A stretch of 64,000 bases of DNA, taken from the IMG/VR virus record IMGVR_UViG_3300020165_000007, positions 1-64,000 of that record; one strand, 5' to 3'. Of the stretch, positions 689 to 63,853 are shown in pieces. A program made the translations under genes and the position numbers. How positions within the stretch are numbered: the first letter of the stretch is position 1; each line of letters begins with the position of its first letter. The notes under the pieces were generated by a model, which did not search any database, had not been told where the DNA came from, and saw nothing but the letters and a program-made list of their open reading frames with translations.

Positions 689-707
689 ATATAAATATTG
701 TTATATT

Positions 708-743
708 TTAAACTGAACCTGACGGTTGCCAGGTTCAGTTTAA
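708..743 (-). terminator. Hairpin, probable intrinsic terminator
   Basis: 14-bp inverted repeat TTAAACTGAACCTG/CAGGTTCAGTTTAA just downstream of the 755 stop. Confidence 0.6.
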
Positions 744-754
744 TAATTTTATTA

Positions 755-3700
755 TTACATATACTCACCTAAAGGGCGAACATTTATAGTAATAGTATAT
801 GTACCACTTGTTATTGTGAAGCCTAAACTAGCTACTCCGCCAGTGGAGGTTACCCTAAACGAAAGTCCTGCCGTGGAACCTCCAGCATCTCTAGTTGAGG
901 TGTCCGTAAATTGTACCGATGTACTTGTTCCGTCCCAAGCTGATAAGATTGTTCCTGTTCTTGCTCCTGTTGTAGCGTCTGTCTTTTTAACCACATAATC
1001 AATAACCATACCGTCATAATCTGACTGGTTTACAGAGTAGAATGTAGTGTTACTACTCACGACTCCCGCTTGACTAAAGGTTTTAACACCTCTAAACAAG
1101 TCAAATTGTATACAAACGTTATCTACAGGTGTATTTGAAGTGTCAACAAGTGGTGACGCGTATACTGCAGTTGGTGTTATAGTTAGTATGTTACTTGAGA
1201 ATGAAGTTCCTTCCGCATCGAATTCATAGATGATATAACTATCAGTATCATTAAGTTCTGTAATAGTTAACGTTCCACTTAACCGTCTGCCGTTAATCAT
1301 TGTGTAATACTGAGTCCAATCAACACCATCAAAGTTTGTATCAAATATTCTAATAGTACTTGCTGTTGTAATACCTCCAACAAATTGAATGTCACCGTTC
1401 GCATCGGGTACGTTAGAATCTACCTTATAAGTATTACATATTCCTTCACCTGATGTTCCTGAAGAACCACTACTTCCTGAAGTACCTGAAGAACCTGACG
1501 TTCCGCTACTTCCTGAAGAACCTGACGTTCCTGAAGAACCGCTACTACCACTAGTTCCGCTTGAACCTGAACTACCTGACGTTCCACTACTTCCTGAAGA
1601 ACCTGATGTTCCTGATGAACCGCTTGAACCTGAAGTTCCTGAAGAACCTGAACTACCTGATGTTCCGCTACTTCCTGAAGAACCTGATGTTCCTGAAGAA
1701 CCGCTACTTCCACTAGTTCCGCTTGAACCTGAACTACCTGACGTTCCACTACTTCCTGAAGAACCTGATGTTCCTGAAGAACCGCTACTTCCACTAGTTC
1801 CGCTTGAACCTGAACTACCTGACGTTCCACTACTTCCTGAAGAACCTGAAGTTCCTGAAGAACCTGAACTACCTGATGTTCCGCTACTTCCTGAAGAACC
1901 TGACGTTCCTGATGAACCGCTTGAACCTGAAGTTCCTGAAGAACCTGAACTACCTGATGTTCCACTACTTCCTGAAGAACCTGATGTTCCTGAAGAACCG
2001 CTACTTCCACTAGTTCCGCTTGAACCTGAACTACCTGACGTTCCACTACTTCCTGAAGAACCTGAACTACCTGATGTTCCGCTACTTCCTGAAGAACCTG
2101 ATGTTCCTGAAGAACCGCTACTTCCACTAGTTCCGCTTGAACCTGAACTACCTGACGTTCCACTACTTCCTGAAGAACCTGATGTTCCTGAAGAACCGCT
2201 ACTTCCACTAGTTCCGCTTGAACCTGAACTACCTGACGTTCCACTACTTCCTGAAGAACCTGAAGTTCCTGAAGAACCTGAACTACCTGATGTTCCGCTA
2301 CTTCCTGAAGAACCTGACGTTCCTGATGAACCTGAAGAACCTGATGTTCCTGAAGAACCGCTACTACCACTAGTTCCGCTTGAGCCTGAACTACCTGACG
2401 TTCCACTGCTTCCTGAAGAACCTGATGTTCCTGATGAACCGCTTGAACCTGAAGTTCCTGAAGAACCTGAACTACCTGATGTTCCGCTACTTCCTGAAGA
2501 ACCTGACGTTCCTGATGAACCTGAAGAACCTGATGTTCCTGATGAACCTGAACTACCTGACGTTCCACTACTTCCTGAAGAACCTGACGTTCCTGAAGAA
2601 CCAGATGAACCTGAAGTTCCGCTACTTCCTGATGAACCTGAAGAACCTGATGTTCCTGAAGAACCTGAACTACCTGAGGTTCCTGATGAACCACTACTTC
2701 CTGAAGAACCTGACGTTCCTGAAGAACCAGATGAACCTGAAGTTCCGCTACTTCCTGATGAACCTGATGTTCCTGAAGAACCTGAACTACCGGATGTTCC
2801 GCTACTTCCTGAAGAACCTGACGTTCCTGATGAACCACTACTTCCACTAGTTCCTGATGAACCTGAACTACCTGATGTTCCACTACTTCCTGATGAACCT
2901 GATGTCCCTGAAGAACCACTACTTCCGCTAGTTCCTGAAGAACCAGATGAACCTGATGTTCCTGAAGAACCACTACTTCCACTAGTTCCTGATGAACCTG
3001 AAGAACCTGATGTTCCTGAAGAACCACTACTTCCACTAGTTCCTGATGAACCTGAAGAACCTGATGTTCCTGATGAACCACTACTTCCACTAGTTCCTGA
3101 TGAACCTGAACTACCTGATGTTCCACTACTTCCTGATGAACCTGATGTTCCTGAAGAACCACTACTTCCACTAGTTCCTGATGAACCTGATGAACCTGAT
3201 GAACCTGATGAACCACTACTTCCACTAGTTCCTGATGAACCTGAAGAACCTGATGTTCCGCTACTTCCTGATGAACCTGATGTTCCGCTACTTCCTGATG
3301 AACCTGATGTTCCTGATGAACCTGAACTACCTGACGTTCCACTACTTCCTGAAGAACCTGACGTTCCACTACTTCCTGAAGAACCTGATGTTCCTGATGA
3401 ACCTGAAGAACCTGATGTTCCACTACTTCCTGAAGAACCTGATGTTCCACTACTTCCTGAAGAACCTGATGTTCCTGATGAACCTGAAGAACCTGATGTT
3501 CCTGATGAACCTGAACTACCTGATGTTCCACTACTTCCTGATGAACCTGAAGAACCTGACGTTCCGCTACTTCCTGATGAACCTGATGTTCCTGATGAAC
3601 CTGAACTACCTGATGTTCCACTACTTCCTGATGAACCTGATGTTCCTGATGAACCTGAACTGCCTGATGTTCCACTACTTCCTGATGAACCTGAAGTTCC

Positions 3701-4960
3701 GCTACTTCCTGAAGAACCTGATGTTCCTGATGAACCACTACTTCCGCTAGTTCCTGATGAACCTGAAGAACCTGATGTTCCTGATGAACCTGAAGAACCT
3801 GATGTTCCGCTACTTCCTGATGAACCTGATGTTCCTGATGAACCTGAAGAACCTGATGTTCCTGAAGAACCACTACTTCCACTAGTTCCTGATGAACCTG
3901 AACTACCTGATGTTCCACTACTTCCTGATGAACCTGATGTTCCTGATGAACCTGAACTACCTGATGTTCCACTACTTCCTGATGAACCTGAAGTTCCGCT
4001 ACTTCCTGAAGAACCTGATGTTCCTGATGAACCACTACTTCCGCTAGTTCCTGATGAACCTGAAGAACCTGATGTTCCTGATGAACCTGAAGAACCTGAT
4101 GTTCCTGAAGAACCACTACTTCCACTAGTTCCTGATGAACCTGAAGAACCTGATGTTCCGCTACTTCCTGATGAACCTGATGTTCCTGATGAACCTGAAG
4201 AACCTGATGTTCCTGATGAACCTGAAGAACCTGACGTTCCACTACTTCCTGAAGAACCTGATGTTCCATTGGTAAATGGTGTAAAGCAAATTACCGCTGA
4301 CCCTAAATCAAGCGACATAGGATTAGTACCTACAAAATTATTAGTTTGAATAGTAAATCTATAGTATGTTGTAGCTGACTGAACCGCCTGAGGTGTGATT
4401 GAAGTGAAATTATCACTACTATCAGTTATTGTTATTAAACCAGACTCATTTTCAAACTGAGATAATAGACTTGTAATATCAATTCCGTTTTGAGTCGTAT
4501 CAACAACGATAGCTGTGTTAGTAGGGATACTATTATCTATAGTAATATTGTTATCTGCAGGTGTGACTTGTGACCCACTAATATTGGAAATATTTGTGTC
4601 GTAACATCCAGCACCTAATGAACCTCCTGTTTCACTTATAGTTAACCAGTTAGTACCATTAGTAATGATTTGTAAACTTTCATTAACAGATAAAGTAATT
4701 GTACTTTCACCATCAATAGTATTACCATTACCATCTACAATGACTTTTTGGCTTGAATTAAAATTATTTTTTATGATTAGATTTAACCCCTCTACAGGTG
4801 TAGGTAGGGTCATCGTTCTATTCGACGAAGATGCTGTTACATCTATATAGTAATCTGTGTCCGCATCTATTGAGTAATTAGCGTCATTTATCTCAATCAA
4901 CGGTAGTCTAACACCCCCAAGGGATATTAGACCTTTTCTTAATACAAATCCATTTGCCAT
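755..4960 (-). CDS. Long collagen-like (GSS/GTS) fibre protein, 1401 aa
   Basis: Globular N-terminal region, ~940 aa of unbroken Gly-X-X, globular C-terminal region; lies in the tail-appendage cluster. Confidence 0.85.
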   Translation of the reverse strand: MANGFVLRKGLISLGGVRLPLIEINDANYSIDADTDYYIDVTASSSNRTMTLPTPVEGLNLIIKNNFNSSQKVIVDGNGNTIDGESTITLSVNESLQIITNGTNWLTISETGGSLGAGCYDTNISNISGSQVTPADNNITIDNSIPTNTAIVVDTTQNGIDITSLLSQFENESGLITITDSSDNFTSITPQAVQSATTYYRFTIQTNNFVGTNPMSLDLGSAVICFTPFTNGTSGSSGSSGTSGSSGSSGTSGSSGSSGTSGSSGSSGTSGSSGSSGTSGSSGSSGTSGSSGSSGTSGSSGSSGTSGSSGSSGTSGSSGSSGTSGSSGSSGTSGSSGSSGTSGSSGSSGTSGSSGSSGTSGSSGSSGTSGSSGSSGTSGSSGSSGTSGSSGSSGTSGSSGSSGTSGSSGSSGTSGSSGSSGTSGSSGSSGTSGSSGSSGTSGSSGSSGTSGSSGSSGTSGSSGSSGTSGSSGSSGSSGTSGSSGSSGTSGSSGSSGTSGSSGSSGTSGSSGSSGTSGSSGSSGTSGSSGSSGTSGSSGSSGTSGSSGSSGTSGSSGSSGTSGSSGSSGTSGSSGSSGTSGSSGSSGSSGSSGSSGTSGSSGSSGTSGSSGSSGTSGSSGSSGTSGSSGSSGTSGSSGSSGTSGSSGSSGTSGSSGSSGTSGSSGSSGTSGSSGSSGTSGSSGSSGTSGSSGSSGTSGSSGSSGTSGSSGSSGTSGSSGSSGTSGSSGSSGTSGSSGSSGTSGSSGSSGTSGSSGSSGSSGTSGSSGSSGTSGSSGSSGSSGTSGSSGSSGTSGSSGSSGTSGSSGSSGTSGSSGSSGTSGSSGSSGTSGSSGSSGTSGSSGSSGTSGSSGSSGTSGSSGSSGTSGSSGSSGTSGSSGSSGTSGSSGSSGTSGSSGSSGTSGSSGSSGTSGSSGSSGTSGSSGSSGTSGSSGSSGTSGSSGSSGTSGSSGSSGTSGSSGSSGTSGSSGSSGSSGTSGSSGSSGTSGSSGSSGTSGSSGSSGTSGSSGSSGTSGSSGSSGTSGSSGSSGTSGSSGSSGTSGSSGSSGTSGSSGSSGTSGSSGSSGTSGSSGSSGTSGSSGSSGTSGSSGSSGTSGSSGSSGTSGSSGSSGTSGSSGSSGTSGSSGSSGTSGSSGSSGTSGSSGSSGTSGSSGSSGTSGSSGTSGSSGSSGTSGEGICNTYKVDSNVPDANGDIQFVGGITTASTIRIFDTNFDGVDWTQYYTMINGRRLSGTLTITELNDTDSYIIYEFDAEGTSFSSNILTITPTAVYASPLVDTSNTPVDNVCIQFDLFRGVKTFSQAGVVSSNTTFYSVNQSDYDGMVIDYVVKKTDATTGARTGTILSAWDGTSTSVQFTDTSTRDAGGSTAGLSFRVTSTGGVASLGFTITSGTYTITINVRPLGEYM
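1448..4268 (-). repeat. Coding tandem repeat, 27-nt unit encoding (GSSGSSGTS)n
   Basis: Degenerate 9/27-nt periodicity with synonymous variation; Gly at every third codon. Confidence 0.95.
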
Positions 4961-5042
4961 ATTTTATTTTTTTTAGGTTCTTTTTATTTTTTATATAAAT
5001 ACTTTTATATTGTATATTGTTATCTATTTCTACCTTATATTA

Positions 5043-6590
5043 TTAGAATAATATTTCAGTTCTTATTTTAACGTCCCATATCGTACTATTGGTCGTTGTG
5101 GCCCTTAAAATTATATTACTACCACTAATTAAAGTACTAAATACTATATCATCAGTATTAAATGTACCGTCTAAAGTTGAGTAATCCGTAAATACGTTAC
5201 TACTTCCATTTTTACTTACCGCCGATAATATTTTTCCAGTTCTAAATCCGCTTGTTGATTGTTCATTTACATAATATGTGAATTCGTATGAACTTCCTCC
5301 TGTAGTTGGTAGTGAGACTAAATTATGATTACCATTTGTGGTGATAGTCGTATTAACTGATTGTTGATATGAACTACCATATTGTACACTGTTTCCAGAT
5401 ATTAATAGGTTATTAGTTATTCCGTCAAATGTTAAATTACTTTCTACACTTCCAGTACCATCACCATCATAAGTAATAACCCCATTTACTGTATCTCCAT
5501 CTAACTCTAAAAACCCTGATGTTCCACTACTTCCTGAGGAACCTGATGTTCCACTAGAACCTGAACTACCTGATTCTCCTGAAGAACCTGAAGAACCTGA
5601 CGTTCCACTACTTCCTGAGGAACCTGATGTTCCACTAGAACCTGAACTACCTGATTCTCCTGAAGAACCTGAAGAACCTGACGTTCCACTACTTCCTGAT
5701 GAACCTGATGTTCCACTACTACCTGAACTACCTGATTCTCCTGAAGAACCTGAAGAACCTGACGTTCCACTACTTCCTGAGGAACCTGATGTTCCACTAG
5801 AACCTGAACTACCTGATTCTCCTGAAGAACCTGAAGAACCTGACGTTCCACTACTTCCTGATGAACCTGATGTTCCACTACTACCTGAACTACCTGATTC
5901 TCCTGAAGAACCTGAAGAACCTGACGTTCCACTACTTCCTGAGGAACCTGATGTTCCACTAGAACCTGAACTACCTGATTCTCCTGAAGAACCTGAAGAA
6001 CCTGACGTTCCACTAGAACCTGAACTACCTGATTCTCCTGAAGAACCTGAAGAACCTGATGTTCCACTAGAACCTGAACTACCTGATGTTCCTGATGAAC
6101 CTGAAGAACCTGACGTTCCACTACTTCCTGAGGAACCTGATGTTCCACTAGAACCTGAACTACCTGATTCTCCTGAAGAACCTGAAGAACCTGATGTTCC
6201 ACTAGAACCTGAACTACCTGATGTTCCTGAGGAACCTGATGTTCCACTAGAACCTGAACTACCTGATTCTCCTGAAGAACCTGAACTTCCTGACGTTCCA
6301 CTAGAACCTGATGAACCTGATTCTCCACCCGCACCTCCTTCTTTTAATACTAAATCCGAATCTGTAATACCTGAAAAATACCAATAATTTTGTATTCCAT
6401 CTTCAGCCTCTGTTAATTGTAGTCCGTTATATGTTGTTGTACCAGTAACTATACCTACAGTTAACCCTACAAACCTATTCGCACTTACAATACTACTATT
6501 AGCGACTGTAGTGCTACTATACGGACCATATCTTGAATCGAGTGGTAAACCACCTTGTAAATCTATATTACTACTTAAAACTATTCCCAT
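5043..6590 (-). CDS. Collagen-like (GSS/GTS/GES) fibre protein, 515 aa
   Basis: N-domain LPLDSRYGPY...RFVGLTV, ~270 aa Gly-X-X, C-domain homologous to that of 755..4960 (RTG.ILSA...FTD.ST.D). Confidence 0.85.
   Translation of the reverse strand: MGIVLSSNIDLQGGLPLDSRYGPYSSTTVANSSIVSANRFVGLTVGIVTGTTTYNGLQLTEAEDGIQNYWYFSGITDSDLVLKEGGAGGESGSSGSSGTSGSSGSSGESGSSGSSGTSGSSGTSGSSGSSGTSGSSGSSGESGSSGSSGTSGSSGSSGTSGSSGSSGTSGSSGSSGTSGSSGSSGESGSSGSSGTSGSSGSSGESGSSGSSGTSGSSGSSGTSGSSGSSGESGSSGSSGTSGSSGSSGTSGSSGSSGESGSSGSSGTSGSSGSSGTSGSSGSSGESGSSGSSGTSGSSGSSGTSGSSGSSGESGSSGSSGTSGSSGSSGTSGSSGSSGESGSSGSSGTSGSSGSSGTSGFLELDGDTVNGVITYDGDGTGSVESNLTFDGITNNLLISGNSVQYGSSYQQSVNTTITTNGNHNLVSLPTTGGSSYEFTYYVNEQSTSGFRTGKILSAVSKNGSSNVFTDYSTLDGTFNTDDIVFSTLISGSNIILRATTTNSTIWDVKIRTEILF
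5513..6330 (-). repeat. Coding Gly-X-X repeat with GES roughly every 27 aa
   Basis: Near-exact ~81-nt higher-order repeats visible in the DNA. Confidence 0.9.
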
Positions 6591-6594
6591 GATA

Positions 6595-9516: not shown

Positions 9517-9527
9517 TTATTATATTT

Positions 9528-11711: not shown

Positions 11712-11791
11712 CCTTAAACCTTTTTATTTTTTATATAAATAGTGGTTAGTTTTAATTTGTACCACATTATTTTACCTATAAAAATATTTTT

Positions 11792-14692: not shown

Positions 14693-14696
14693 GATA

Positions 14697-21219: not shown

Positions 21220-21220
21220 T

Positions 21221-30422: not shown

Positions 30423-30495
30423 AAAATTACTTTTAAAATAAATAGTTATTTATACTAATTTTAAAACTATTTAAATAAAAGTATATGGAAGAAAA

Positions 30496-32339: not shown

Positions 32340-32819
32340 TTAAATATTAATTATTATAAAATCTCTACTTTCAAATGTAGTATCTTTAATAGAATAGTCT
32401 ATTTTTACTTTCGCAGTATATTCATCTACCCCTTCACCTGCAGTTCTAAAAATGTCAAACATTTCATATTCAGAATTTTCGTCTTCGGTATTTAGAGTAC
32501 CCGAAACATTCCTATCATCTTCACTATAAGGGGATATAGATATGTCATTAATCTGTAAATTAGGTATGTATTTATCAACTGATGTTTGTATATCTGATTT
32601 TATTGCATCAAATGTTGGTCCGTCCATTGGTTCAAAAATAAACTCATATATCCTAGTTCCAAAGTCAGGTAAGTAATATCTACTACCTTTCCTTGTTAAT
32701 ATTAAATGTAATAAATCCGTCCTTATCTCATCTTCGGCAGTTTTTGTCCGAGTGAGATAGTTACCATTAACACTTTCAGAAAATGGAAATTTTATACCAT
32801 ATGATTTATTTATTGCCAT
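32340..32819 (-). CDS. Baseplate wedge / sheath initiator (gp25-like)
   Basis: LILTRKGSRYYLPDFGTRIYEFIFEP is the GPW/gp25 signature. Confidence 0.9.
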   Translation of the reverse strand: MAINKSYGIKFPFSESVNGNYLTRTKTAEDEIRTDLLHLILTRKGSRYYLPDFGTRIYEFIFEPMDGPTFDAIKSDIQTSVDKYIPNLQINDISISPYSEDDRNVSGTLNTEDENSEYEMFDIFRTAGEGVDEYTAKVKIDYSIKDTTFESRDFIIINI

Positions 32820-32849
32820 AACAATAAATATTCGATATAATATTTTTAT

Positions 32850-32883
32850 AAATAAAACCCACCTTTTTAGATGGGTTTTATTT
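32850..32883 (-). terminator. Intrinsic terminator after nrdA
   Basis: AAATAAAACCCA...TGGGTTTTATTT inverted repeat with U-rich tail immediately after the stop. Confidence 0.7.
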
Positions 32884-37288: not shown

Positions 37289-37327
37289 GTTTATCAGTTT
37301 TTAAAATACGTGTCTTAATAAATATAA

Positions 37328-40742: not shown

Positions 40743-40781
40743 TTTTCTTTTATTCTTTAAAAATTTATCTATTATTCTATA

Positions 40782-40812: not shown

Positions 40813-40825
40813 TTACTGAGAATAA

Positions 40826-40851: not shown

Positions 40852-40875
40852 AATAAAAATATTTACACGGTTTAA

Positions 40876-41496: not shown

Positions 41497-41509
41497 AATA
41501 TTTTTTATT

Positions 41510-41734
41510 TTATCCGTTTAATAGTGTCTTCATTCCCTGTGGGGTCTCAACTCTTAGAGTTTTATTAACTTTCATAGTATTATCTACTCTTTCGATTAAC
41601 CCGTCTCTCATTCTTACCGTATAACAGTCTCCGGTATCTAAATCACACACTTCTTTATATCCGTTTCCGTTATCACGCTCAGTTAATCGACTATCCTTTT
41701 GTAGATATGTGTCTAATAAATTTTTTATGTTCAT
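41510..41734 (-). CDS. Hypothetical protein, 74 aa
   Basis: ATG ORF preceded by TATTTAT; contains EVCDLDTGDCY. Confidence 0.7.
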   Translation of the reverse strand: MNIKNLLDTYLQKDSRLTERDNGNGYKEVCDLDTGDCYTVRMRDGLIERVDNTMKVNKTLRVETPQGMKTLLNG

Positions 41735-41773
41735 TACTCTTTTTTATATAAATATATTGATTATTTGGAATAT

Positions 41774-48388: not shown

Positions 48389-48695
48389 AATAGAAGAAGT
48401 GAGTGTCTAATGCCTTTTTATAATCTTGTAAAGAATTTACCAAAGGAAAGGGTATAATTAAAACTGACCCGTCACTAATGTTGTTTTCCAACCCACCATA
48501 TTTTGGGTTAGCCATTAATATTAACCAACCAAAATAAGGAGTACCATAAAATTCTTGGCTTAATTTATCTAACCTACTCTGTGTCACTTTATAAATAAAT
48601 TTTTTATCTGTGGGTTTTGCAGGTAATGACACAAACGGTACAACCGTTTGTTTTCCGTTGATTAAGAAGTCTTGATATCTGTCGTAGTATCTCAT
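48378..48695 (-). CDS. LysM-like baseplate wedge protein (gp53/gpX-like)
   Basis: RLDKLSQEFYG.P..GWLILMANP...G.VLIIP. Confidence 0.8.
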   Translation of the reverse strand: MRYYDRYQDFLINGKQTVVPFVSLPAKPTDKKFIYKVTQSRLDKLSQEFYGTPYFGWLILMANPKYGGLENNISDGSVLIIPFPLVNSLQDYKKALDTHFFYYGR

Positions 48696-53452: not shown

Positions 53453-53468
53453 ACGAATCTATTTTTAT

Positions 53469-53475
53469 ATAAATA
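53469..53475 (-). promoter_or_regulatory. TATTTAT element, representative copy of a putative late promoter
   Basis: The same heptamer precedes 13 minus-strand operon-leading starts (listed under findings). Confidence 0.6.
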
Positions 53476-53491
53476 GATTAGATATTCATTT

Positions 53492-55585: not shown

Positions 55586-55609
55586 TATTAAGTATTATAT
55601 TATAAATAC

Positions 55610-55802
55610 TTATCTTTTAGATTTTACTTTTTCGGACTGTTGTTTTCGTTTATCAAATTCCTCAACTAACTTTCCTATAAAGTATTTTCTTTCGTATGTA
55701 GGCATATTAATTAAGTCGTTATAAGAAAAATTTGCATGACGAGTTAAGTAATATATTTCATCAAGCACAGATACCCTAGATTCAGAAGAAAGGCCGAAAA
55801 AA
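55610..55802 (-). CDS. Tail chaperone C-terminal extension (probably made by frameshift)
   Basis: EIYYL....FSYNDLINMPTYERKYFI resembles tail-chaperone second ORFs; no ATG near its start; overlaps the upstream gene in the +1 frame. Confidence 0.65.
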
Positions 55803-56537: not shown

Positions 56538-56554
56538 ATTTTTGTGTAAAAAAA

Positions 56555-56580
56555 AACCATAGGGAATAAACCCTATGGTT
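56555..56580 (-). terminator. Intrinsic terminator after the tail tube gene
   Basis: AACCATAGGG-AATAAA-CCCTATGGTT followed by a long T-run on the minus strand. Confidence 0.75.
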
Positions 56581-56614
56581 AATTATATAAACTATTATTT
56601 TTTTTTCAATAGTA

Positions 56615-57103
56615 TTAGTAAACCAAAATACATCTATCAGGACGTAATGTCGCTGTAATTGTTGCCAATGCGTCATCACTATATCCCAAACTATCAAAAT
56701 TAACATCAGTTAAGAAAGTACCCTGTAGAATCCATTTTTCAACCGCAACTCCTGTAGGGTCTAACATTTCAAGGTCTAGGTCTTTCTTATAACCAGCTGC
56801 GTATCCCATACGACCTGTAACGGACTCTGAGGTTAATCTTACCCATTCCATTAAGGCTTGTGCTGCCGATGGTCCTATGGGGTCTCTAAACGTCACGTTT
56901 ATCGTATTCCAAGTAAATCTACCAGCAACATAAGTAGATGTGTTTAAGAAAGGAATCTCAGTTGCGTTAATTTGGACGTTAGGTCTAGATGTGGACTCAA
57001 CATACCAAGAGTTAATACCCAATGATGAAGGAAAACTTAGAACAAATCTATTTTTTCTTTTCGGTTCATACGGTACGGGCATTTTCATTAATAAATCAGC
57101 CAT
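56615..57103 (-). CDS. Tail tube protein (gp19-like)
   Basis: EPKRKNRF, YVAGRFTWNTINVTFRD, YKKD..L..LDP.G..VEKW.L.G.F. Confidence 0.88.
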   Translation of the reverse strand: MADLLMKMPVPYEPKRKNRFVLSFPSSLGINSWYVESTSRPNVQINATEIPFLNTSTYVAGRFTWNTINVTFRDPIGPSAAQALMEWVRLTSESVTGRMGYAAGYKKDLDLEMLDPTGVAVEKWILQGTFLTDVNFDSLGYSDDALATITATLRPDRCILVY

Positions 57104-57224
57104 TGTATTTTGGTTTTAAATTTCGTTGTTTATTTTATTATAAATATCAGTGTTAAACTTTTTTCTCTTTACTTTTACTTTTTTAATTGTAAAATCCTTA
57201 ACTAGAGATTAGAAACTAGAATTT

Positions 57225-58076: not shown

Positions 58077-58081
58077 GTATT

Positions 58082-58219
58082 TTAATTATTTAGATTTTCA
58101 ATTAATCTCTCTAATTGTGATTCCGTCAAAACAATATTTTGAGGTTTTTCAGAATAGGTCTTAACTCCATTACCATTAATTTGTAATGACTCTCTTAGTA
58201 ATTTTTTTTTAAATTCCAT
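58082..58219 (-). CDS. Small 45-aa protein (not in ORF track)
   Basis: MEFKKKLLRESLQINGNGVKTYSEKPQNIVLTESQLERLIENLNN; A-rich 5' context; stop 5 nt before the next ATG. Confidence 0.65.
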   Translation of the reverse strand: MEFKKKLLRESLQINGNGVKTYSEKPQNIVLTESQLERLIENLNN

Positions 58220-58255
58220 TTTTTTATTTTATTAAACGTTTAATTATATGGCTAA

Positions 58256-58285
58256 AAATGGGGGATACTTTTGTACCCCCCATTT
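58256..58285 (-). terminator. Hairpin after the tail sheath gene
   Basis: AAATGGGGG...CCCCCATTT inverted repeat with T-run. Confidence 0.6.
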
Positions 58286-58293
58286 AATAAATA

Positions 58294-61200
58294 TCAGATA
58301 TCCTCAAATGATGCACCTGTCGGAGTAATTAAGAATTCTATATCGATGAATTCTAACGCTCTTGTTGGTTTTAGATATATTTTACCTACTAAGGTGTTAT
58401 TATCTAAATCTTCAGGAGTGTTCTGAACGACAACTCTAAAGTCAATCAAACCTCTATCTCTTCTGATAGAATCTAAGATTGGGTTTACTGAGTCCAAGAA
58501 TTCTTGTCTTACTTGGTCATCATTCTGTTCGAACAATAGTCTTACCGCTACTGCTGAAATCAACTTACGAGCTTGTAATAACAATCTTCTAACATTGATT
58601 CTGTCGAGTGCTGACTGTTTAACTTGAGTAGTTTTATTACCCCATATTACTGTACCAACATCTGAGAAAGTTGCGATTGGGTTGATTCTACCTTTATATA
58701 GAATGTCTCTATCATCTTGAGTTAACTTCTTACGAGCTTTAATACCATTTACTAAACCTCTTGTATAACCCGCGGATGCGAACCATGGGAATGATATATT
58801 ATCTGTTAACGCTAAGTTTCTAACAACTTCAGCGGTAGGTGGTAAGTAAATCTGTGTGTTATTAACAGTATCTCTTGTAAGAATCCATGGGTAATAAGTT
58901 GCAGTATAGTTAGAGTCAATTCCAGTATCTTCTAAGTTTTCGGTCGCTTCTTGTGGGTAAATAAAGTCAGTTGTAAAATTAGACGTAGTATTAACAAACA
59001 TGTTATAGTCAGGTGTGGTACAGATATAAATTGAGTCCGCTCTATCCGTTTCAATCATATCAATCGCCTCCTCTACTAAGTTTGAGTTATTAACATAATC
59101 TATACCTGAAGTAGTAAACACATTAATATTTACAGCTTCAGGGTTAACAAAAGTCCACTGACCCCATAAGTAAGCATAATAGTCAGTATTACCCCAATCT
59201 TGTTTATCTGGACCAACAATTGTTTTAAACGCCCCCCATCCTGTTGCACTTGGGAATCTAACTGATGGTGCCGCTCCACGTAGATATCCATTATTACCTA
59301 ATATAAATGTATCTCCATTAGTACGAGACTCTCGATAGATATCCCATCCATCAAATCCTCCAGTAGGAACTAATGTAAATTTACGAGAATTTAATCTGTA
59401 ATATGGACTATCTTCGTTAGGTTCACTATCGAATGATGCGTCACCAACCTCAAACGCAGTTTCACCCGAAGTTACATACTGAGATGGGATTAGAACTACA
59501 GTCGCTCCTGAGTCCATATGATATCCTTTTGTTAATTCCGCCCACGGAGATGACTCAGTAGCGGTAGATAAGTTAGTCGGATTTTGTTTACCCTTATAAG
59601 AGGTAAAGTCGACATCAATACCGACAGTATTCGATACACCTAAGAAAACTCTTCTTGGGTTATCGCCCGCACTTCTTGTTAAGTTATCTCCATTAGAAGA
59701 CCCAAAAGGAGGGTTAAATAACACCTCACCTGGAGTATCATACTTAGTCTTATAAAGTAGGTGTGGTGATTTATAACTACTGTACTGTCGAGTTTGGTAA
59801 CCTTTAAAACCACAAGGTAATGAATCGGACGGAGCCTCTTCATTTACTTCTAACATAATATATCTTGACTTTAACTCAAAATCTCCATTAGCTGTACCGA
59901 TTTTTTTAGCCACATAACTATTAAGATTTATATCCATGGTACAGTTTGTGAATTTTTCTAATACGATTGGGTTAGAATCGGTATCATAAAAACTTCTAAC
60001 AACAACGTCAAAGGTTAGGTTATTAAATGATATATTCATTATAGAGACTTTAATCTCTCTGTTCGCCGAGTTACCGTCTGAGATTGAAATAACTTTAAAT
60101 AAGTCGGAAACTTCATTACCTCTTAATTCTGAAACTAAATATGGTGTAGAGGGGGTTTGATACCTATCTAAGTACCATCCGATACCTGTATTATCAACAT
60201 CTTCTCTCGCACTTTGTAATCCTAATAAAGTAGTATTTAATCCTCTAATCTTACCTTCTTTGTATCCTGTATTTAATAAGTTATAATAAATTTCCTCGAC
60301 AAATAATGGAATTTCATTACTTGGTTTAGAAAAATTACTTTGACCTAACACTTTACTTATAAAGTTAGGGTCACTTAAAGAAAGTGATGTGTTGAACGTA
60401 AATATCTCTGAGTCGTTTGTTATACCTGAAATTTGGAAATTAGAGAATGGATTATTAGTTATTCCTGAATATACTCCTGTAGAGTTAATTGTTACATTGG
60501 TTAATCCTGAAACTTCGTAATCGGGATTATTAGAATTACTAGTTGTTGATATCCCTCTTGACCTTAGTGTACTAACAACCATATTATGGTAATCAGTGAT
60601 TGGTGTTCCTGTATATGTGGTAGTATATACAACACCCACACCTGTATAATTGTTACCTACAGTATTTGTTAATCCTGTGATAGACAATCCAAAACCGACA
60701 CCACTGTATTCACCTGTACCACTATTATATGGGAATAAAGCGTAATACCATGAATCATTTTCAGACGCTTCAAAATCTGCGGTATCAATGGTAAGACCAT
60801 CCACACCCAATACGTTAGTTGTACCTGTCCATGTTCCCGAAGCTCCAGTTATTGCGTCATAAGTTTCGCCACTAACAGTACCAAACATAAATGATGTGGC
60901 TCCTGAACTGACGGGGTTAACAATACTTTGATAAACCGCAGATTCAAAGTTGCCCTGTAATGTTGATATATTACCTGAAAATGTTGTATAAGGTAATCCG
61001 AACACACTTTCTATAGATGAAGGTAAGTTACTAAAATCAGTAATTTCAGTTGAACTACTATTACCTGATACACCACTAAAAGTTATTGTATAAGCAATTC
61101 CGTCAGAATCTTTAGGAGTAATTAATGATTTATTTACGTTACCCACCGTTGATATTGACCATGATGGTCCAGCATCGTATCCTGATAAACCTAAGACACG

Positions 61201-61479
61201 AGTCACAAAAAGTTGATTGGATTGTTGTAAGTAGGCTTTGGCAATATATGCCGCCTCATATTTTGGAATCTGTGTGTTTACAAATTTAGTTGGTTCTGTC
61301 CCCCCAAAAAATGAGGTAAACTCATCAAAGTTTGTAATGAAGATAGGTTCGAACGCCGGACCTGATAAGGTTTCACCGACGACACCTAAAGTCGTTACAC
61401 CGACACTTTGAGCCACAAAACTTAAATCTCTTTCTGATGTATATACACCTGGAGATACGAATACTTTTTCTGCTGCCAT
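58294..61479 (-). CDS. Contractile tail sheath protein (gp18-like), 1061 aa
   Basis: SPGVYTSERD, GPAFEP, YYPW, PWFASAGYTRG, RINPI, WGNKT, RINVRRLL, FEQND, EFIDI. Confidence 0.95.
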   Translation of the reverse strand: MAAEKVFVSPGVYTSERDLSFVAQSVGVTTLGVVGETLSGPAFEPIFITNFDEFTSFFGGTEPTKFVNTQIPKYEAAYIAKAYLQQSNQLFVTRVLGLSGYDAGPSWSISTVGNVNKSLITPKDSDGIAYTITFSGVSGNSSSTEITDFSNLPSSIESVFGLPYTTFSGNISTLQGNFESAVYQSIVNPVSSGATSFMFGTVSGETYDAITGASGTWTGTTNVLGVDGLTIDTADFEASENDSWYYALFPYNSGTGEYSGVGFGLSITGLTNTVGNNYTGVGVVYTTTYTGTPITDYHNMVVSTLRSRGISTTSNSNNPDYEVSGLTNVTINSTGVYSGITNNPFSNFQISGITNDSEIFTFNTSLSLSDPNFISKVLGQSNFSKPSNEIPLFVEEIYYNLLNTGYKEGKIRGLNTTLLGLQSAREDVDNTGIGWYLDRYQTPSTPYLVSELRGNEVSDLFKVISISDGNSANREIKVSIMNISFNNLTFDVVVRSFYDTDSNPIVLEKFTNCTMDINLNSYVAKKIGTANGDFELKSRYIMLEVNEEAPSDSLPCGFKGYQTRQYSSYKSPHLLYKTKYDTPGEVLFNPPFGSSNGDNLTRSAGDNPRRVFLGVSNTVGIDVDFTSYKGKQNPTNLSTATESSPWAELTKGYHMDSGATVVLIPSQYVTSGETAFEVGDASFDSEPNEDSPYYRLNSRKFTLVPTGGFDGWDIYRESRTNGDTFILGNNGYLRGAAPSVRFPSATGWGAFKTIVGPDKQDWGNTDYYAYLWGQWTFVNPEAVNINVFTTSGIDYVNNSNLVEEAIDMIETDRADSIYICTTPDYNMFVNTTSNFTTDFIYPQEATENLEDTGIDSNYTATYYPWILTRDTVNNTQIYLPPTAEVVRNLALTDNISFPWFASAGYTRGLVNGIKARKKLTQDDRDILYKGRINPIATFSDVGTVIWGNKTTQVKQSALDRINVRRLLLQARKLISAVAVRLLFEQNDDQVRQEFLDSVNPILDSIRRDRGLIDFRVVVQNTPEDLDNNTLVGKIYLKPTRALEFIDIEFLITPTGASFEDI

Positions 61480-61617
61480 ATTAATTATTTTTCTTTTTAT
61501 TTATTTTATTGATAAATATTATAGAAAAAACCAAACGACAAATGTTATGGCGTTATATTTATTTACAAGTATGAAAAATTTCTTACTTTTTTCTACCTTT
61601 TTAAAAACCTTTCTTAA

Positions 61618-61767
61618 ATGATAAAAATAAAGAATTTAAAAATATCTGAAGAATCACATGATATGTTGAAAAAACACTGTCAAAAAAACGGATTAAAAAT
61701 GTTTAAGTTTATTGAAAAACTTATTGAAGAAAACTGTAAAGAAGAAATCGACATCTATGGTGAATAA
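61618..61767 (+). CDS. Small ribbon-helix-helix-like DNA-binding protein, 49 aa (not in ORF track)
   Basis: MIKIKNLKISEESHDMLKKHCQKNGLKMFKFIEKLIEENCKEEIDIYGE has a strand-helix-Gly-helix pattern; stop abuts the convergent gene. Confidence 0.65.
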   Translation: MIKIKNLKISEESHDMLKKHCQKNGLKMFKFIEKLIEENCKEEIDIYGE

Positions 61768-62817
61768 TTAATTACTATAGGGTATGTGTGCTTTTGTCTT
61801 AATAGTGGAATCCTTACTGTCATCTATTTTAACGACATCGAACTTAATGATGTCATTGGTGTTAACCTGTATATTACTTAAATCATCTCCCATATAATTG
61901 TCGTTAATATATACTGAAAACTCATCGACGTTATCTGTCGACAAAAAAGTTAGGTCTATGGTATATGGATATTTTTCAGATAAACTATTAATTCCCGACA
62001 TAAATAAAATATCTATGTCGAAGTTCTGAGGATTAGGTGGGTTTTTTCTAGCCCTTCTTGATTGTGTCCCCGTCTCCACTTCATATAATGTTAATGCCCT
62101 ACTAATTGCCGGAGAAACTTGGAACTCTTCCTCGTCAATTAAAAAACCCATCATTAAGAACTCATAGTTTTGAACGTAGTACTTCCTTTTTTCAATATCC
62201 AATACTGACTCATCAGATATACCATTTAAAATTATAGGAACGTAATGACCCTTAACAAATGTATAAGCTTGTCTTGAAGAAAATTTCTGTAAAACTAATT
62301 TGTTAAACTCATTCAAGTGTCGCATTTTAGTACAAAATATTTTTATATTATACGTAATATCTACAGGTACGGGTTGAGGGATTTTATAAATATCCATTCC
62401 TTTTCTTTGACCGTCCCACGTTGGAACCTTAGCGTAGTAAAATTGTTTTCTGTTTGGTATGGTGTACTGTAGTGAAGGGTTGGTACCGTACTTAACGTCT
62501 GGATTTCTTACAGTTGCAATAAATGGGGGTTTGATGTTTTTATCTAAGTTCTGAAAATCCCAAGTCTCAGCAAACTGAGACCAGTTTTGAGTTGTAATAA
62601 TAATATCAACAGGGTTAACTTTTTTACCCTCTGCAGTCATCTCTAAATCGTTCTTAACAAAATCTAACATACCCCTATCTAAGTCAGCATGTAAAACACT
62701 CTTAGGTAAATATGTACCATCTTTTTGAATATATTCCAGTAGTTGCTCCCTCCTCTCTAATAAAATTTTATCAGGAGTTAAAGGTAGATGTTTTTTTATT
62801 TTTTTAGGAAATGACAT
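61768..62817 (-). CDS. Putative tail terminator / neck protein (gp15-like)
   Basis: PQPVPVDITYNIKIF motif; position between head-closure and sheath genes. Confidence 0.55.
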   Translation of the reverse strand: MSFPKKIKKHLPLTPDKILLERREQLLEYIQKDGTYLPKSVLHADLDRGMLDFVKNDLEMTAEGKKVNPVDIIITTQNWSQFAETWDFQNLDKNIKPPFIATVRNPDVKYGTNPSLQYTIPNRKQFYYAKVPTWDGQRKGMDIYKIPQPVPVDITYNIKIFCTKMRHLNEFNKLVLQKFSSRQAYTFVKGHYVPIILNGISDESVLDIEKRKYYVQNYEFLMMGFLIDEEEFQVSPAISRALTLYEVETGTQSRRARKNPPNPQNFDIDILFMSGINSLSEKYPYTIDLTFLSTDNVDEFSVYINDNYMGDDLSNIQVNTNDIIKFDVVKIDDSKDSTIKTKAHIPYSN

Positions 62818-63290
62818 TAGATTACTATTTCATTTATATGGAAGATTTTATTTCGAGTATTAATCATATCAATCTCATTTGCGTTATAAATTGGTTCTTC
62901 GCTATCTTTTTTAACAAATGAATCGTATTTGTATGGGTTATATGTGATTACGTTATCATTAGTTTCTGCAGGCATTTCTTCACAAGGGAACTGACAATAG
63001 TCAACTAAATCACCAATAACAAATGCGTGTACGTTCTTTCTCATTTCTTGTCTTACTTTGTCTTTTCCCCCCTTTCTTACCCTAAACTCTACATTTCTTA
63101 ATTTAACGTAGTCGGCATACAAAATTACCCTACCCCCATAAGTCACTGAAAATGTATGTTTATGTAAGTTATAATATACCATAACCCTCAAACCAGTTAA
63201 ATCCTCAGGAGTTAATTCTTCCTCCTGTTCAATAATTAAACCCATATGAGTCTTCATTTTATTAATTTCTTTTAATAGATATCTATTCAT
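62817..63290 (-). CDS. Conserved-looking phage hypothetical protein, 157 aa
   Basis: VYYNLHK..FSV, RKNVHAFVIG, YNPYK core preceded by a ~30-aa leader. Confidence 0.7.
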   Translation of the reverse strand: MNRYLLKEINKMKTHMGLIIEQEEELTPEDLTGLRVMVYYNLHKHTFSVTYGGRVILYADYVKLRNVEFRVRKGGKDKVRQEMRKNVHAFVIGDLVDYCQFPCEEMPAETNDNVITYNPYKYDSFVKKDSEEPIYNANEIDMINTRNKIFHINEIVI

Positions 63291-63802
63291 AATCCTCTAA
63301 ATTCATTTTCACTAACAGGTGATGCAGTAATTGACCTATAATAAGGTTTGTAACCACCATAAGTATGTTTATTATCACTCGTGACTCTTCCGTCATTAGA
63401 TACCGAGTAGTATCTAACACGAGATTCAGTCTCATAGTAACCTATATAATCACCATAATTAATATCTATTTCTAACTCATCTAAAGTCGTTTGATATACG
63501 CCAACCTTTAAGTTACCCGGCTCCATTTGTGTCATGTTACTATTACCGTAATTTTGATTTTCAGGTTGTTCTATTTGGACGTACCCCCTAAATTCAACGG
63601 GAGGATGGAACTTTACTCCGTCTTCTACGGTTTCACCGTAAACATCATCAGTTACTGTTTTTTGTTGGTCGATTCTATATAAAACTAACCTAAAATTCAT
63701 ATCACCCTCAAGCCATTCTCGACCCATTGCGATATCTAACTCAAAGTCTTCCGACCCGAAAAACTTTTCTAATCTTGTAATTGGAACCTTTCTATTACTC
63801 AT
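63287..63802 (-). CDS. Putative head-closure / neck protein (gp14-like)
   Basis: LYRID....DDVYGE......F.PPVE, L...I..GDYI pattern; position upstream of the tail genes. Confidence 0.55.
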   Translation of the reverse strand: MSNRKVPITRLEKFFGSEDFELDIAMGREWLEGDMNFRLVLYRIDQQKTVTDDVYGETVEDGVKFHPPVEFRGYVQIEQPENQNYGNSNMTQMEPGNLKVGVYQTTLDELEIDINYGDYIGYYETESRVRYYSVSNDGRVTSDNKHTYGGYKPYYRSITASPVSENEFRGL

Positions 63803-63853
63803 TATTGATAAATATTAAGTTATTTGTTATATTTAAGTGTATTTAGTCGACTT

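What the first reader, a model, noticed from the sequence alone, without database searches (positions are those of the whole stretch)
691..63814. Coding-strand TATTTAT element before nearly every operon-leading gene, sometimes only 2-5 nt from ATG
Seen: ATAAATA on + (TATTTAT on the coding strand) at 691, 4995, 11735, 30438, 32824, 37318, 41748, 53469, 55602, 57140, 58287, 61512 and 63808, with gaps to ATG of 2, 34, 23, 15, 4, 29, 13, 16, 16, 36, 67, 32 and 5 nt. A plus-strand copy at 61556 precedes the only internal plus-strand gene. Known: the T4 late promoter is TATAAATA on the coding strand; here the word is its reverse complement. Inference: a phage-specific late promoter. Gaps of 2-5 nt are too short for a normal -10 box plus leader, so initiation would be in or at the motif, or the mRNAs are leaderless. 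Caveat: the 58287 copy lies upstream of a terminator-like hairpin, and the genome is AT-rich.
Basis: partly seen in the sequence, partly recalled or inferred. Interest (0 to 1): 0.65.

Follow-up and report, generated by a model that had tools for sequence, protein, structure and literature searches.

The report
Phage-specific TATTTAT promoter element
A strict seven-letter word, TATTTAT, sits just upstream of about 70 genes of an uncultured 270-kb marine jumbo phage and is conserved at the same genes in its relatives. It is most likely the -10-type promoter box read by a phage-encoded sigma factor on the host RNA polymerase, a close analogue of the phage T4 late promoter.

Summary
All 13 listed copies and their gaps to ATG are correct, and one more copy lies at 32848. 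The whole-window count is not enriched (51 vs 45 expected), but the strand-aware intergenic count is. In the window, 14 of 30 coding-strand copies lie in 1.6 kb of intergenic DNA (expected 1.9). Genome-wide, upstream segments hold 76 sense copies against 15-17 in shuffles, and 81 copies point toward a gene against 16 away. No single-mismatch variant is enriched.

Presence or absence of the motif is conserved gene by gene in relatives with 63-100% identical sheaths. The 270-kb genome shows no RNA polymerase gene but has two sigma-like genes. A separate, nearly non-overlapping set of early-type genes carries classic Bacteroidota host promoters (TTTG-N~20-TAnnTTTG).

Both promoter classes show a spacing peak of 4-5 nt to ATG. 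Under the known Flavobacterium geometry this puts the transcription start on the A of ATG, so those mRNAs would be leaderless.

Best reading: a phage middle/late -10-like element, TATTTAT(A), 6 of 8 identical to T4's TATAAATA on the same strand. It is not strictly "late", because it also heads the DnaB/ribonucleotide-reductase operon. Which sigma reads it, and the start sites themselves, remain untested.

The parts
691..697 (-). TATTTAT copy 2 nt upstream of the ATG at 688 (gene cut by the contig end)
4995..5001 (-). TATTTAT copy 34 nt upstream of the collagen-like tail-fibre gene 755-4960; followed by an A-run
11735..11741 (-). TATTTAT copy 23 nt upstream of gene 9528-11711
30438..30444 (-). 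TATTTAT copy 15 nt upstream of the 1684-aa gene 25368-30422, which leads a long run of tightly packed genes down to 11792
32824..32830 (-). TATTTAT copy 4 nt upstream of the gp25-like baseplate gene 32340-32819 (leaderless-type spacing)
32848..32854 (-).
37318..37324 (-). TATTTAT copy 29 nt upstream of the DnaB-like helicase gene 35912-37288, which leads the ribonucleotide-reductase genes
41748..41754 (-). TATTTAT copy 13 nt upstream of the 74-aa gene 41510-41734
53469..53475 (-). TATTTAT copy 16 nt upstream of the 1585-aa gene 48695-53452; the motif is present in 24 of 24 distinct orthologous upstream regions
55602..55608 (-). TATTTAT copy 16 nt upstream of the 697-aa gene 53492-55585; kept in 4 of 4 orthologous regions
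57140..57146 (-). TATTTAT copy 36 nt upstream of the gp19-like tail-tube gene 56615-57103; kept in 41 of 41 orthologous regions
58287..58293 (-). TATTTAT copy abutting the sheath stop codon and upstream of a GC-rich hairpin; 67 nt from the ATG of the conserved 45-aa ORF 58082-58219. This is the weakest copy: 19 of 35 relatives have it before the hairpin and 2 after it
61512..61518 (-). TATTTAT copy 32 nt upstream of the tail-sheath gene 58294-61479; invariant in about 50 distinct relatives' upstream regions while the flanks vary
63808..63814 (-). TATTTAT copy 5 nt upstream of gene 63287-63802 (leaderless-type spacing); present in 32 of 32 orthologous regions, at 5-6 nt in 26 of them
61556..61562 (+). 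Plus-strand TATTTAT copy 55 nt upstream of the 49-aa plus-strand ORF; in the sheath orientation it is the conserved ATAAATAT block seen in relatives
61618..61767 (+). Conserved 49-aa ORF, possibly a ribbon-helix-helix protein (weak Pfam matches to RepB regulator and ParG, E 0.005-0.01), divergent from the sheath promoter

Best explanation
TATTTAT (extended form aTATTTATa, usually followed by w-n-w-AAAA) is the -10-region-like core of a phage-specific promoter class. It is used for middle and late genes of an uncultured marine jumbo myovirus that most likely infects Bacteroidota.

Proposed sequence of events:
1. Host RNA polymerase with host sigma-A first reads host-type promoters (TTTG-N~20-TAnnTTTG). 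These lie in front of early-type genes, including the operon that contains a phage RpoD-like sigma gene.
2. A phage-encoded sigma then redirects the host core enzyme to TATTTAT sites. The candidates are the RpoD-like 271-aa protein and a very highly conserved, divergent 250-aa sigma-like protein. No conserved -35 box accompanies the motif.
3. Transcription starts about 5-6 nt downstream of the motif. This gives either leaderless mRNAs (motif 4-5 nt from ATG) or short A-rich leaders (motif 13-17 nt from ATG; some at 30-37 nt).

Shown here: enrichment, orientation, strictness of the word, spacing classes, conservation at orthologous genes, presence of sigma-like genes, no RNA polymerase detected, and separation from the host-type promoter set.

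Inferred, not shown: that it is a promoter rather than an RNA-level signal, the transcription start position, leaderless translation, and which sigma reads it.
For: Enrichment and orientation:
- 76 sense copies in upstream segments against 15-17 +/- 4 in shuffles.
- 51 sense against 10 antisense copies in unidirectional intergenic regions.
- Only 4 copies, both strands together, in 2.7 kb of convergent gaps.
- 81 copies point toward the adjacent gene and 16 away.

Strictness:
- None of the 21 single-mismatch variants shows sense enrichment of its own. TATTTGT (14 sense, 2 antisense) overlaps the host-type box and TATTTAC is marginal (7 against 2).
- TATTTATA is 32 sense against 4 antisense; ATATTTAT is 32 against 2.
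- TATTTAT and TATTTATA are the top-ranked sense-biased 7-mer and 8-mer.

Spacing:
- The gap to ATG peaks at 4-5 nt and at 13-17 nt.
- Among leadered sites, A peaks at +5 to +7 after the motif. That is where the A of ATG falls in the 4-5 nt class.
- Host-type TAnnTTTG promoters in the same genome have the same 4-5 nt class.
- In F. johnsoniae that element lies 4-5 nt from the transcription start (PMC6847099).

Conservation at orthologous genes in relatives:
- Genes with the motif here keep it in 24/24, 4/4, 41/41, 50/50, 32/32, 15/17 and 24/24 distinct orthologous upstream regions.
- Genes without it here lack it there: it is present in only 4/40, 1/51, 1/50 and 0/23.
- It is the invariant block in the sheath upstream alignment.

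Transcription machinery:
- No match to the RNA polymerase families PF00562, PF00623 or PF00940.
- One sigma-70 protein with regions 1.2, 2 and 4 (Pfam E about 1e-15).
- One 250-aa sigma-like protein. It matches Sigma70_r2 (E 7.6e-4 in the genome scan). Its residues 30-135 fold like sigma domain 2 (SigW Z 8.4, rmsd 2.8 A over 92 residues; T4 gp55 Z 6.0). All of the top 50 structural matches are sigma factors or complexes that contain one.
- A profile search of PDB sequences gives SigA at E 8e-4 and gp55 at E 0.14.

Two separate gene sets:
- 73 genes carry TATTTAT, 24 carry TAnnTTTG, and only 2 carry both.
- The TAnnTTTG set encodes an AAA protease, a nuclease, DNA methyltransferases and small unknown proteins.
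- The TATTTAT set encodes portal, adaptor, protease, sheath, tube, gp25-like protein and fibres.
Against: - No transcription start data exist. The only RNA data are short metatranscriptome contigs, which cannot show 5' ends.
- An RNA-level signal, such as a processing site, would give the same sense-strand and intergenic bias.
- Only 18 of 44 gene starts in divergent regions have the motif and 6 more have the host-type box, so other or degenerate promoters must exist.
- Three window genes that follow hairpins lack it (start codons at 39824, 40784 and 56537).
- The 58287 copy sits upstream of a terminator-like hairpin and is only partly conserved.
- The 250-aa sigma-like gene lies inside a TATTTAT-led gene run, with no recognised promoter of another class found upstream of it. 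It therefore cannot easily be the first activator of these sites.
- The RpoD-like sigma has a region 4, yet no -35 box is seen.
- In lineages whose sigma-like protein is only 36-38% identical, the motif is inconsistent or absent.
Confidence: 0.75

Rival explanations
1. TATTTAT acts in the RNA, not the DNA. It would be a site-specific endoribonuclease processing site, or a translation-initiation or stability element in polycistronic transcripts of a host that lacks Shine-Dalgarno sequences.
For: - The sense-strand and intergenic bias would look the same for an RNA signal.
- Many copies sit in 11-12 nt junctions of the form stop codon, TATTTAT, 4-5 nt, ATG, inside gene runs.
- Only 7% of genes have a Shine-Dalgarno-like 4-mer.
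- No start-site data exist.
Against: - The spacing to ATG has three classes (4-5, 13-17 and 30-37 nt), which is unlike a ribosome-positioning signal.
- Bona fide host-type promoters with a -33 TTTG box show the same 4-5 nt class.
- Divergent intergenic regions, where no upstream transcript exists, carry one copy facing each gene, for example at 84546/84565 and at 178898/178910.
- The motif is nearly exclusive with host-type promoters.
- Only 73 of 312 genes have it.
Confidence: 0.1
2. TATTTAT is simply a variant -7 box read by the host's own sigma-A, with no phage sigma needed.
For: - Aligned by the inferred start site, TATTTATA shares T-12, A-11, T-8 and T-6 with the host TAnnTTTG box.
- It shows the same 4-5 nt spacing class (PMC6847099).
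Against: - T-7 and G-5, which are nearly invariant in host promoters (PMC6847099), are A and A here.
- No TTTG box lies about 20 nt upstream.
- The word is stricter than the host box.
- The two motifs mark different gene sets with different functions.
- The phage carries two sigma-like genes.
Confidence: 0.1
3. TATTTAT is the binding site of a phage transcription regulator rather than a sigma-read core element. Candidates would be a MotA-like activator box or the operator of the conserved 49-aa ribbon-helix-helix-like protein.
For: - A conserved small, possibly ribbon-helix-helix gene sits next to the sheath promoter.
- Some copies occur as inverted pairs, for example 30438/30447.
Against: - In the 4-5 nt class there is no room for a separate -10 box between the motif and the ATG.
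- The motif is asymmetric and directional, while ribbon-helix-helix operators are usually repeats.
- No second conserved box lies downstream, apart from the A-run.
Confidence: 0.04
4. Composition artefact: AT-rich intergenic DNA produces the word by chance.
For: - The whole-window count is not above shuffles.
- Intergenic DNA is about 75-80% A+T.
Against: - The observed count is 4-5 times the shuffle expectation within the same upstream segments.
- The antisense word is not enriched, although composition favours it.
- One-mismatch AT-only variants are not enriched.
- The position is conserved in relatives.
Confidence: 0.01

Closest known systems
Phage T4 late promoter (TATAAATA at -10, read by gp55 with gp33 and the gp45 clamp)
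   Same: - A single, very strict AT-only 8-mer in the -10 region with no -35 box.
- Many copies directly upstream of virion genes, in very short intergenic gaps.
- Used by a myovirus with a T4-type sheath, tube and baseplate (gp25- and gp6-like proteins) that relies on the host core polymerase plus a phage sigma.
- 6 of 8 positions are identical on the same strand.
   Different: - The central two bases are TT instead of AA.
- The motif also heads a DnaB/ribonucleotide-reductase operon.
- A clear gp55 orthologue is not shown: phrog_234 E 0.009, structural Z 6.0.
- No gp45 clamp was detected.
- Many sites are only 4-5 nt from ATG, implying leaderless mRNAs.
- The host is probably Bacteroidota, not Enterobacteria.
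Bacteroidota sigma-A promoter (-33 TTTG / -7 TAnnTTTG)
   Same: - Same inferred distance to the transcription start (4-5 nt).
- Shares T-12, A-11, T-8 and T-6.
- Occurs in the same genome, before other genes.
   Different: - A instead of T-7 and A instead of G-5.
- No -33 TTTG box.
- A different and nearly exclusive set of genes.
Sigma-factor cascades of large phages without their own RNA polymerase (Bacillus phage SPO1 gp28 and gp33/34; 'group 2' jumbo phages with minimal and RpoD-like sigmas, PMC7824862)
   Same: - Host-type early promoters, with phage sigma genes among the early or middle genes.
- A distinct promoter word for later genes.
- Two sigma types in one genome.
   Different: - The promoter word is new.
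- The 250-aa sigma-like protein has no homologue in 50,697 GenBank phage records, although it has more than 8,000 metagenomic homologues.
'Moraphages', aquatic jumbo phages predicted to infect Bacteroidota (PMC12619734)
   Same: - Aquatic, 200-300 kb genomes.
- T4-like structural core.
- No RNA polymerase; a sigma factor in the core genome.
- Bacteroidota hosts predicted.
   Different: - Membership of this genome in that lineage was not tested here.
- That paper does not analyse promoters.

Membership tests
T4-type late promoter system | Consensus TATAAATA centred near -10 on the non-template strand | tested here: not met
   The consensus here is TATTTATA (6 of 8 identical). TATAAATA in the sense orientation occurs 4 times against 32 antisense in unidirectional gaps.
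T4-type late promoter system | No -35 element; a single short box is sufficient | tested here: met
   The position matrix of 95 sites shows only a weak T-rich tract at -17 to -13 from the motif start (at most 0.36 bits per position) and no hexamer. The sheath alignment agrees.
T4-type late promoter system | A gp55 orthologue is encoded | tested here: inconclusive
   phrog_234 gives E 0.009 on the 250-aa ORF. T4 gp55 (7d7c_F) aligns with Z 6.0, but ECF sigma domain 2 scores higher at Z 8.4. The profile search of PDB sequences gives gp55 at E 0.14.
T4-type late promoter system | gp45 sliding clamp and gp33 co-activator are encoded | tested here: inconclusive
   phrog_223 (gp45) has no match in the genome. 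gp33 was not searched. The genome is estimated to be 88% complete.
T4-type late promoter system | Precedes virion (late) genes only | tested here: not met
   It heads sheath, tube, gp25-like protein, portal and fibre genes, but also the DnaB/ribonucleotide-reductase operon.
Bacteroidota sigma-A -33/-7 promoter | TAnnTTTG with nearly invariant T-7 and G-5, often with TTTG near -33 | tested here: not met
   TATTTATA has A at both of those positions and no upstream TTTG. True TAnnTTTG sites exist elsewhere in the genome.
Sigma-70-family promoter -10 element (generic) | Located so that transcription starts 4-7 nt downstream | not testable with these tools
   This is inferred only. The A peak at +5 to +7 and the A of ATG at +5/+6 agree. 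No start-site data exist.
Leaderless mRNA | Transcript 5' end at or within a few nt of the start codon | not testable with these tools
   17 TATTTAT genes and about 6 TAnnTTTG genes have gaps of 6 nt or less. The spacing of 5-6 nt is conserved in 26 of 32 orthologous regions of gene 63287-63802.
Sigma-70 family (the 250-aa protein) | A sigma domain 2 fold with region 2 sequence motifs | tested here: met
   Sigma70_r2 gives E 7.6e-4 in the genome scan and 0.017 in the Pfam scan, both below the curated cut-off. The structural match to SigW and sigma-E domain 2 gives Z 8.4, and all top 50 matches are sigma factors or complexes that contain one. SigA scores E 8e-4 in the profile search of PDB sequences.

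The most novel reading that the evidence does not exclude
The 250-aa protein founds a new, cosmopolitan family of phage sigma factors. It has more than 8,000 metagenomic homologues and 1,394 clusters at 50% identity, but none in GenBank phage records. In this reading it recognises the single strict box TATTTAT(A). In a host phylum that lacks Shine-Dalgarno sequences, it would launch many leaderless or near-leaderless mRNAs. Together these would form a self-contained expression code shared by a whole lineage of uncultured aquatic Bacteroidota jumbo phages.
Probability: 0.35. Interest if true: 0.7.

Novelty: new variant of a known kind. Interest (0 to 1): 0.55.

Why it matters
- It gives a testable promoter code, and a likely early-to-late sigma switch, for a very widespread lineage of jumbo phages that has never been cultured. 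The sheath gene has about 600 or more relatives in IMG/VR, and the stretch is held in sequencing runs from 15 studies.
- The motif can be used to define operons and temporal classes in metagenomic phage genomes.
- The host-type TAnnTTTG promoters in the same genome support the assignment of hosts to Bacteroidota.
- The motif offers candidate orthogonal promoter and sigma parts for Flavobacteriia and Bacteroidota.
- The conserved 4-5 nt spacing suggests frequent leaderless mRNAs in a phylum where 87% of host transcripts have leaders longer than 10 nt (PMC6847099). That bears on how translation starts without Shine-Dalgarno sequences.

Tried and rejected
- Whole-window motif count: not enriched. 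Only the strand- and position-aware tests show the signal.
- Megablast of 20 kb of the window against GenBank phages: no match.
- Phage RNA polymerase: PF00562, PF00623 and PF00940 have no match. The PF00940 control rang in no genome, so that negative is weak.
- The giant ORFs of 2204, 1585 and 1684 aa are not RNA polymerase subunits by Pfam or PHROGs.
- Metatranscriptome evidence: four RNA runs hold the region, but only as 150-950 nt contigs. They show no molecule starts and cannot map start sites. One contig crosses the sheath promoter, which could be read-through or DNA.
- Terminator-then-promoter arrangement: a hairpin with a T-run precedes only 9 of 54 motif sites, the same rate as for genes without the motif (17 of 98). 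It does not discriminate.
- A third promoter word for the 68 upstream regions that lack both motifs: none was obvious by eye.
- Sigma-motif co-variation in distant lineages, using six encoding-contig look-ups. The motif is present where the sigma-like protein is 42-50% identical (L105, L106). It is patchy or absent at 36-38% identity (L108, L110, L111, L112). The sample is too small to conclude anything.
- Foldseek search of PDB with the sigma-like model: no match at E 0.001 or better, although the list is dominated by sigma factors.
- Literature searches found no description of this motif.
- No alternative genetic code was used.

Full report
**What the window is**

The window is the first 64 kb of a single 270,383-bp virus contig with GC 33%. 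IMG/VR classes it as linear and CheckV estimates it to be 88% complete.

It is a myovirus with T4-type structural genes:
- tail sheath at 58294-61479
- gp19-like tail tube at 56615-57103
- gp25-like baseplate protein at 32340-32819
- baseplate wedge protein at 30496-32334
- collagen-like tail fibres at 755-9516

It also carries ribonucleotide reductase, a DnaB-like helicase and a UvsX-like recombinase.

Nearly identical DNA is held in marine, seawater and estuary sequencing runs from 15 studies. The sheath protein has about 600 or more relatives in IMG/VR at 63-100% identity. No GenBank phage is close.

**Checking the observation**

All 13 coordinates and all 13 gaps to ATG are correct. One further intergenic copy lies at 32848.

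The simple count over the window is not above chance: 51 on both strands against 44.6 +/- 7.0. The signal appears when strand and position are taken into account.

- In the window, 14 of the 30 coding-strand copies lie in only 1,638 nt of intergenic DNA. That is 8.55/kb against 0.26/kb in coding DNA, with 1.9 expected from intergenic composition (Poisson P = 1.6e-8).
- The antisense word is favoured by composition but occurs only 3 times in intergenic DNA. Two of those three point at the one plus-strand ORF.
- With a crude greedy ORF call of the whole genome (312 ORFs, 5.5% intergenic), 91 of 227 copies are fully intergenic. 81 copies point toward the next gene and 16 away.
- Upstream segments hold 76 sense copies, against 15-17 +/- 4 in shuffles of the same segments.
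- In unidirectional gaps the count is 51 sense against 10 antisense. Convergent gaps, where no promoter is expected, hold 4 copies in 2.7 kb.

**Anatomy of the motif**

TATTTAT is the most sense-biased 7-mer in upstream DNA, and TATTTATA is the most sense-biased 8-mer.

The word is strict. None of the 21 single-mismatch variants shows sense enrichment of its own. TATTTGT is the apparent exception, but it belongs to the other motif described below.

The flanks prefer A on both sides (56% and 58%). No -35-like box is present, only a weak T-rich tract. Leadered sites read TATTTAT-w-n-w-AAAA, with A peaking at +5 to +7 after the motif.

The distance from the motif to the start codon has distinct classes: 4-5 nt and 13-17 nt. 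In relatives there is a third class at 30-37 nt, which comes from the sheath and tube genes.

**A second motif identifies the host**

The words TATATTTG and ATATTTGT are also enriched in upstream DNA. The 20 clear sites read TTTG-N~20-TAnnTTTG, which is the -33/-7 promoter of Bacteroidota sigma-A (PMC6847099).

Other features agree with that phylum. Only 17 of 248 genes have a Shine-Dalgarno-like 4-mer. A is enriched at -3 and at -14 to -11, and mRNAs of this phylum lack Shine-Dalgarno sequences (PMC6847099). A Bacteroidota host, probably Flavobacteriia, is therefore likely. This matches what was proposed for the aquatic 'moraphage' jumbo phages (PMC12619734). Whether this genome belongs to that lineage was not tested.

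**Two nearly exclusive gene sets**

73 genes have TATTTAT in their upstream gap, 24 have TAnnTTTG, and only 2 have both.

- TAnnTTTG-led genes encode an AAA protease, a nuclease, DNA methyltransferases and small unknown proteins. The operon that contains a phage RpoD-like sigma gene also starts with this motif.
- TATTTAT-led genes encode portal, head-tail adaptor, a protease, sheath, tube, gp25-like protein and fibres. They also include the DnaB/ribonucleotide-reductase operon.

The class is therefore middle and late, not purely late.

**Geometry and leaderless starts**

In F. johnsoniae the -7 element spans T-12 to G-5 and lies 4-5 nt from the transcription start. There, 87% of leaders exceed 10 nt (PMC6847099).

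In this phage about six host-type promoters sit 4-5 nt from ATG. On that geometry, transcription would start on the A of ATG. TATTTAT has the same 4-5 nt class: 17 genes have gaps of 6 nt or less. In the leadered sites the A-run lies at the equivalent position.

This internal agreement supports a start about 5-6 nt after the motif, and leaderless mRNAs for the short-gap class. The short gap is conserved. Gene 63287-63802 has it at 5-6 nt in 26 of 32 distinct orthologous regions.

Many short-gap sites are whole gene junctions of the form stop codon, TATTTAT, 4-5 nt, ATG.

**Conservation in relatives**

The motif lies about 30-40 nt upstream of the sheath ATG in all of about 50 distinct relatives' upstream regions. 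It is the invariant block of that alignment, while the flanks vary.

The test was repeated over eleven genes around the sheath.
- Genes with the motif here keep it in 24/24, 4/4, 41/41, 50/50, 32/32, 15/17 and 24/24 orthologous regions.
- Genes without it here lack it there: it is present in only 4/40, 1/51, 1/50 and 0/23.

This gene-by-gene conservation of presence and absence is the strongest evidence of function. The 58287 copy is weaker: 19 of 35 relatives have it before the hairpin and 2 after it.

**Transcription machinery**

No multisubunit or T7-type RNA polymerase was found. The T7-type control rang in no genome, so that negative is weak.

Two sigma-like genes lie outside the window.

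1. Genome 246459-247274 (minus strand), 271 aa. It has sigma-70 regions 1.2, 2 and 4 and matches phrog_351. It is RpoD-like, with 33-38% identity to sigma genes in other phage records.
2. Genome 103598-104350 (plus strand), 250 aa.
   - Sequence: weak matches to Sigma70_r2 and to T4 gp55.
   - Structure: the AlphaFold model has mean pLDDT 71. Residues 30-135 superpose on sigma domain 2 (SigW Z 8.4, rmsd 2.8 A over 92 residues; gp55 Z 6.0). All 50 best matches are sigma factors or complexes that contain one.
   - Profile search of PDB sequences: SigA at E 8e-4 and gp55 at E 0.14.
   - Distribution: more than 8,000 metagenomic homologues, the best 120 of them 74-97% identical. There are 1,394 clusters at 50% identity. 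None is found in 50,697 GenBank phage records.

This picture matches 'group 2' jumbo phages, which lack a polymerase and carry both a minimal and an RpoD-like sigma (PMC7824862).

**Which sigma reads TATTTAT is open**

- For the 250-aa protein: the promoter is a single box without a -35 element, as with gp55, and the protein is extremely conserved, like the motif.
- Against the 250-aa protein: its gene lies inside a TATTTAT-led run with no other recognised promoter upstream.
- For the RpoD-like protein: its gene sits in an operon led by a host-type promoter, and the motif shares geometry and four bases with the host box.
- Against the RpoD-like protein: it has a region 4, but no -35 box is seen.

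Contigs from more distant lineages gave no clear co-variation.

**Comparison with known systems**

On the same strand, TATTTATA differs from the T4 late promoter TATAAATA only at positions 4-5. That it is also the reverse complement is a consequence of the near-palindromic word and has no mechanistic weight.

It works like a T4 late promoter: one strict -10-region box, in many copies before virion genes, read by a phage sigma on the host core enzyme. Membership of the T4 system is not established, for four reasons:
- the consensus differs;
- a gp55 orthologue is not proven;
- no gp45 clamp was found;
- the motif is not confined to late genes.

It is not a host sigma-A promoter either.

I found no description of this word in the paper library. 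The moraphage paper does not analyse promoters.

**Limits**

- Gene calls are from a simple longest-ORF script, so some start codons, and hence some gaps, may be off.
- Orthologous loci are related to each other, so counts across them are not independent events.
- No start-site data exist, because the RNA data are assembled contigs.
- An RNA-level role cannot be excluded without 5'-end chemistry.

**Verdict**

The finding is real and functionally constrained. It is best explained as a phage-specific promoter core with a leaderless subclass. That makes it a new variant of a known kind.

Noticed in passing
genome outside the window, e.g. G000:C1 128523, 152278, 164098, 248578, 250558-253022 (upstream sides): About 20 classic Bacteroidota sigma-A promoters (TTTG-N~20-TAnnTTTG) precede early-type genes (AAA protease, nuclease, DNA methyltransferases, small ORFs) and the operon with the RpoD-like sigma gene. 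Six or seven lie only 4-5 nt from ATG. They point to a Bacteroidota host.
   Followed up: yes
window 61618-61767 (+): A conserved 49-aa ORF lies antisense and directly upstream of the sheath promoter and is found in 68 of 80 related loci. It has weak ribbon-helix-helix-type Pfam matches (RepB regulator, ParG; E 0.005-0.01). It has its own conserved TATTTAT copy, with a small hairpin between that copy and the ATG. It may be a regulator.
   Followed up: partly
window 58082-58219 (-) and hairpin about 58240-58285: A conserved 45-50-aa ORF (MEFKKK...) follows a GC-rich hairpin just downstream of the sheath stop codon, in the 24 relatives where its start codon was found. A conserved 'ttaaacgtttaa' block lies between the hairpin and the ATG. 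Function unknown.
   Followed up: partly
window 41774-48388, 48695-53452, 25368-30422 (all -): Three giant ORFs of 2204, 1585 and 1684 aa have no PHROG or Pfam family match, apart from one OmpA-like domain (residues 802-872 of the 1585-aa protein).
   Followed up: partly
window 10001-12000: A local composition anomaly: GC 0.45, GC skew +0.39 and AT skew -0.26 against about -0.1 to -0.2 elsewhere. It lies inside gene 9528-11711 (-), and a 576-aa ORF is open on the opposite strand (10012-11742).
   Followed up: no
window 1-590: Repeated units of about 27 nt (variants of 'gaacctgacgttccactacttcctgaa') lie at the contig start, inside the truncated minus-strand gene 2-688.
   Followed up: no
G000:C1 about 175290-175380 and 176330-176380: tRNA-like sequences were seen in upstream regions during the promoter listing. 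The window itself has no tRNA.
   Followed up: no
window gaps before the ATGs at 39824, 40784 and 56537: Three genes that follow hairpin and T-run structures have neither TATTTAT nor TAnnTTTG. In relatives the 56537 gene also lacks the motif (present in 4 of 40). Genome-wide, 20 of 44 gene starts in divergent regions have neither word, so at least one more promoter class, or read-through, is likely.
   Followed up: partly
G000:C1 102768-104751: The gene order glycosyltransferase family 2, then the 250-aa sigma-like gene, then a 123-146-aa gene is kept even in contigs whose sigma-like protein is only 36-42% identical. One of these contigs has GC 53%.
   Followed up: partly
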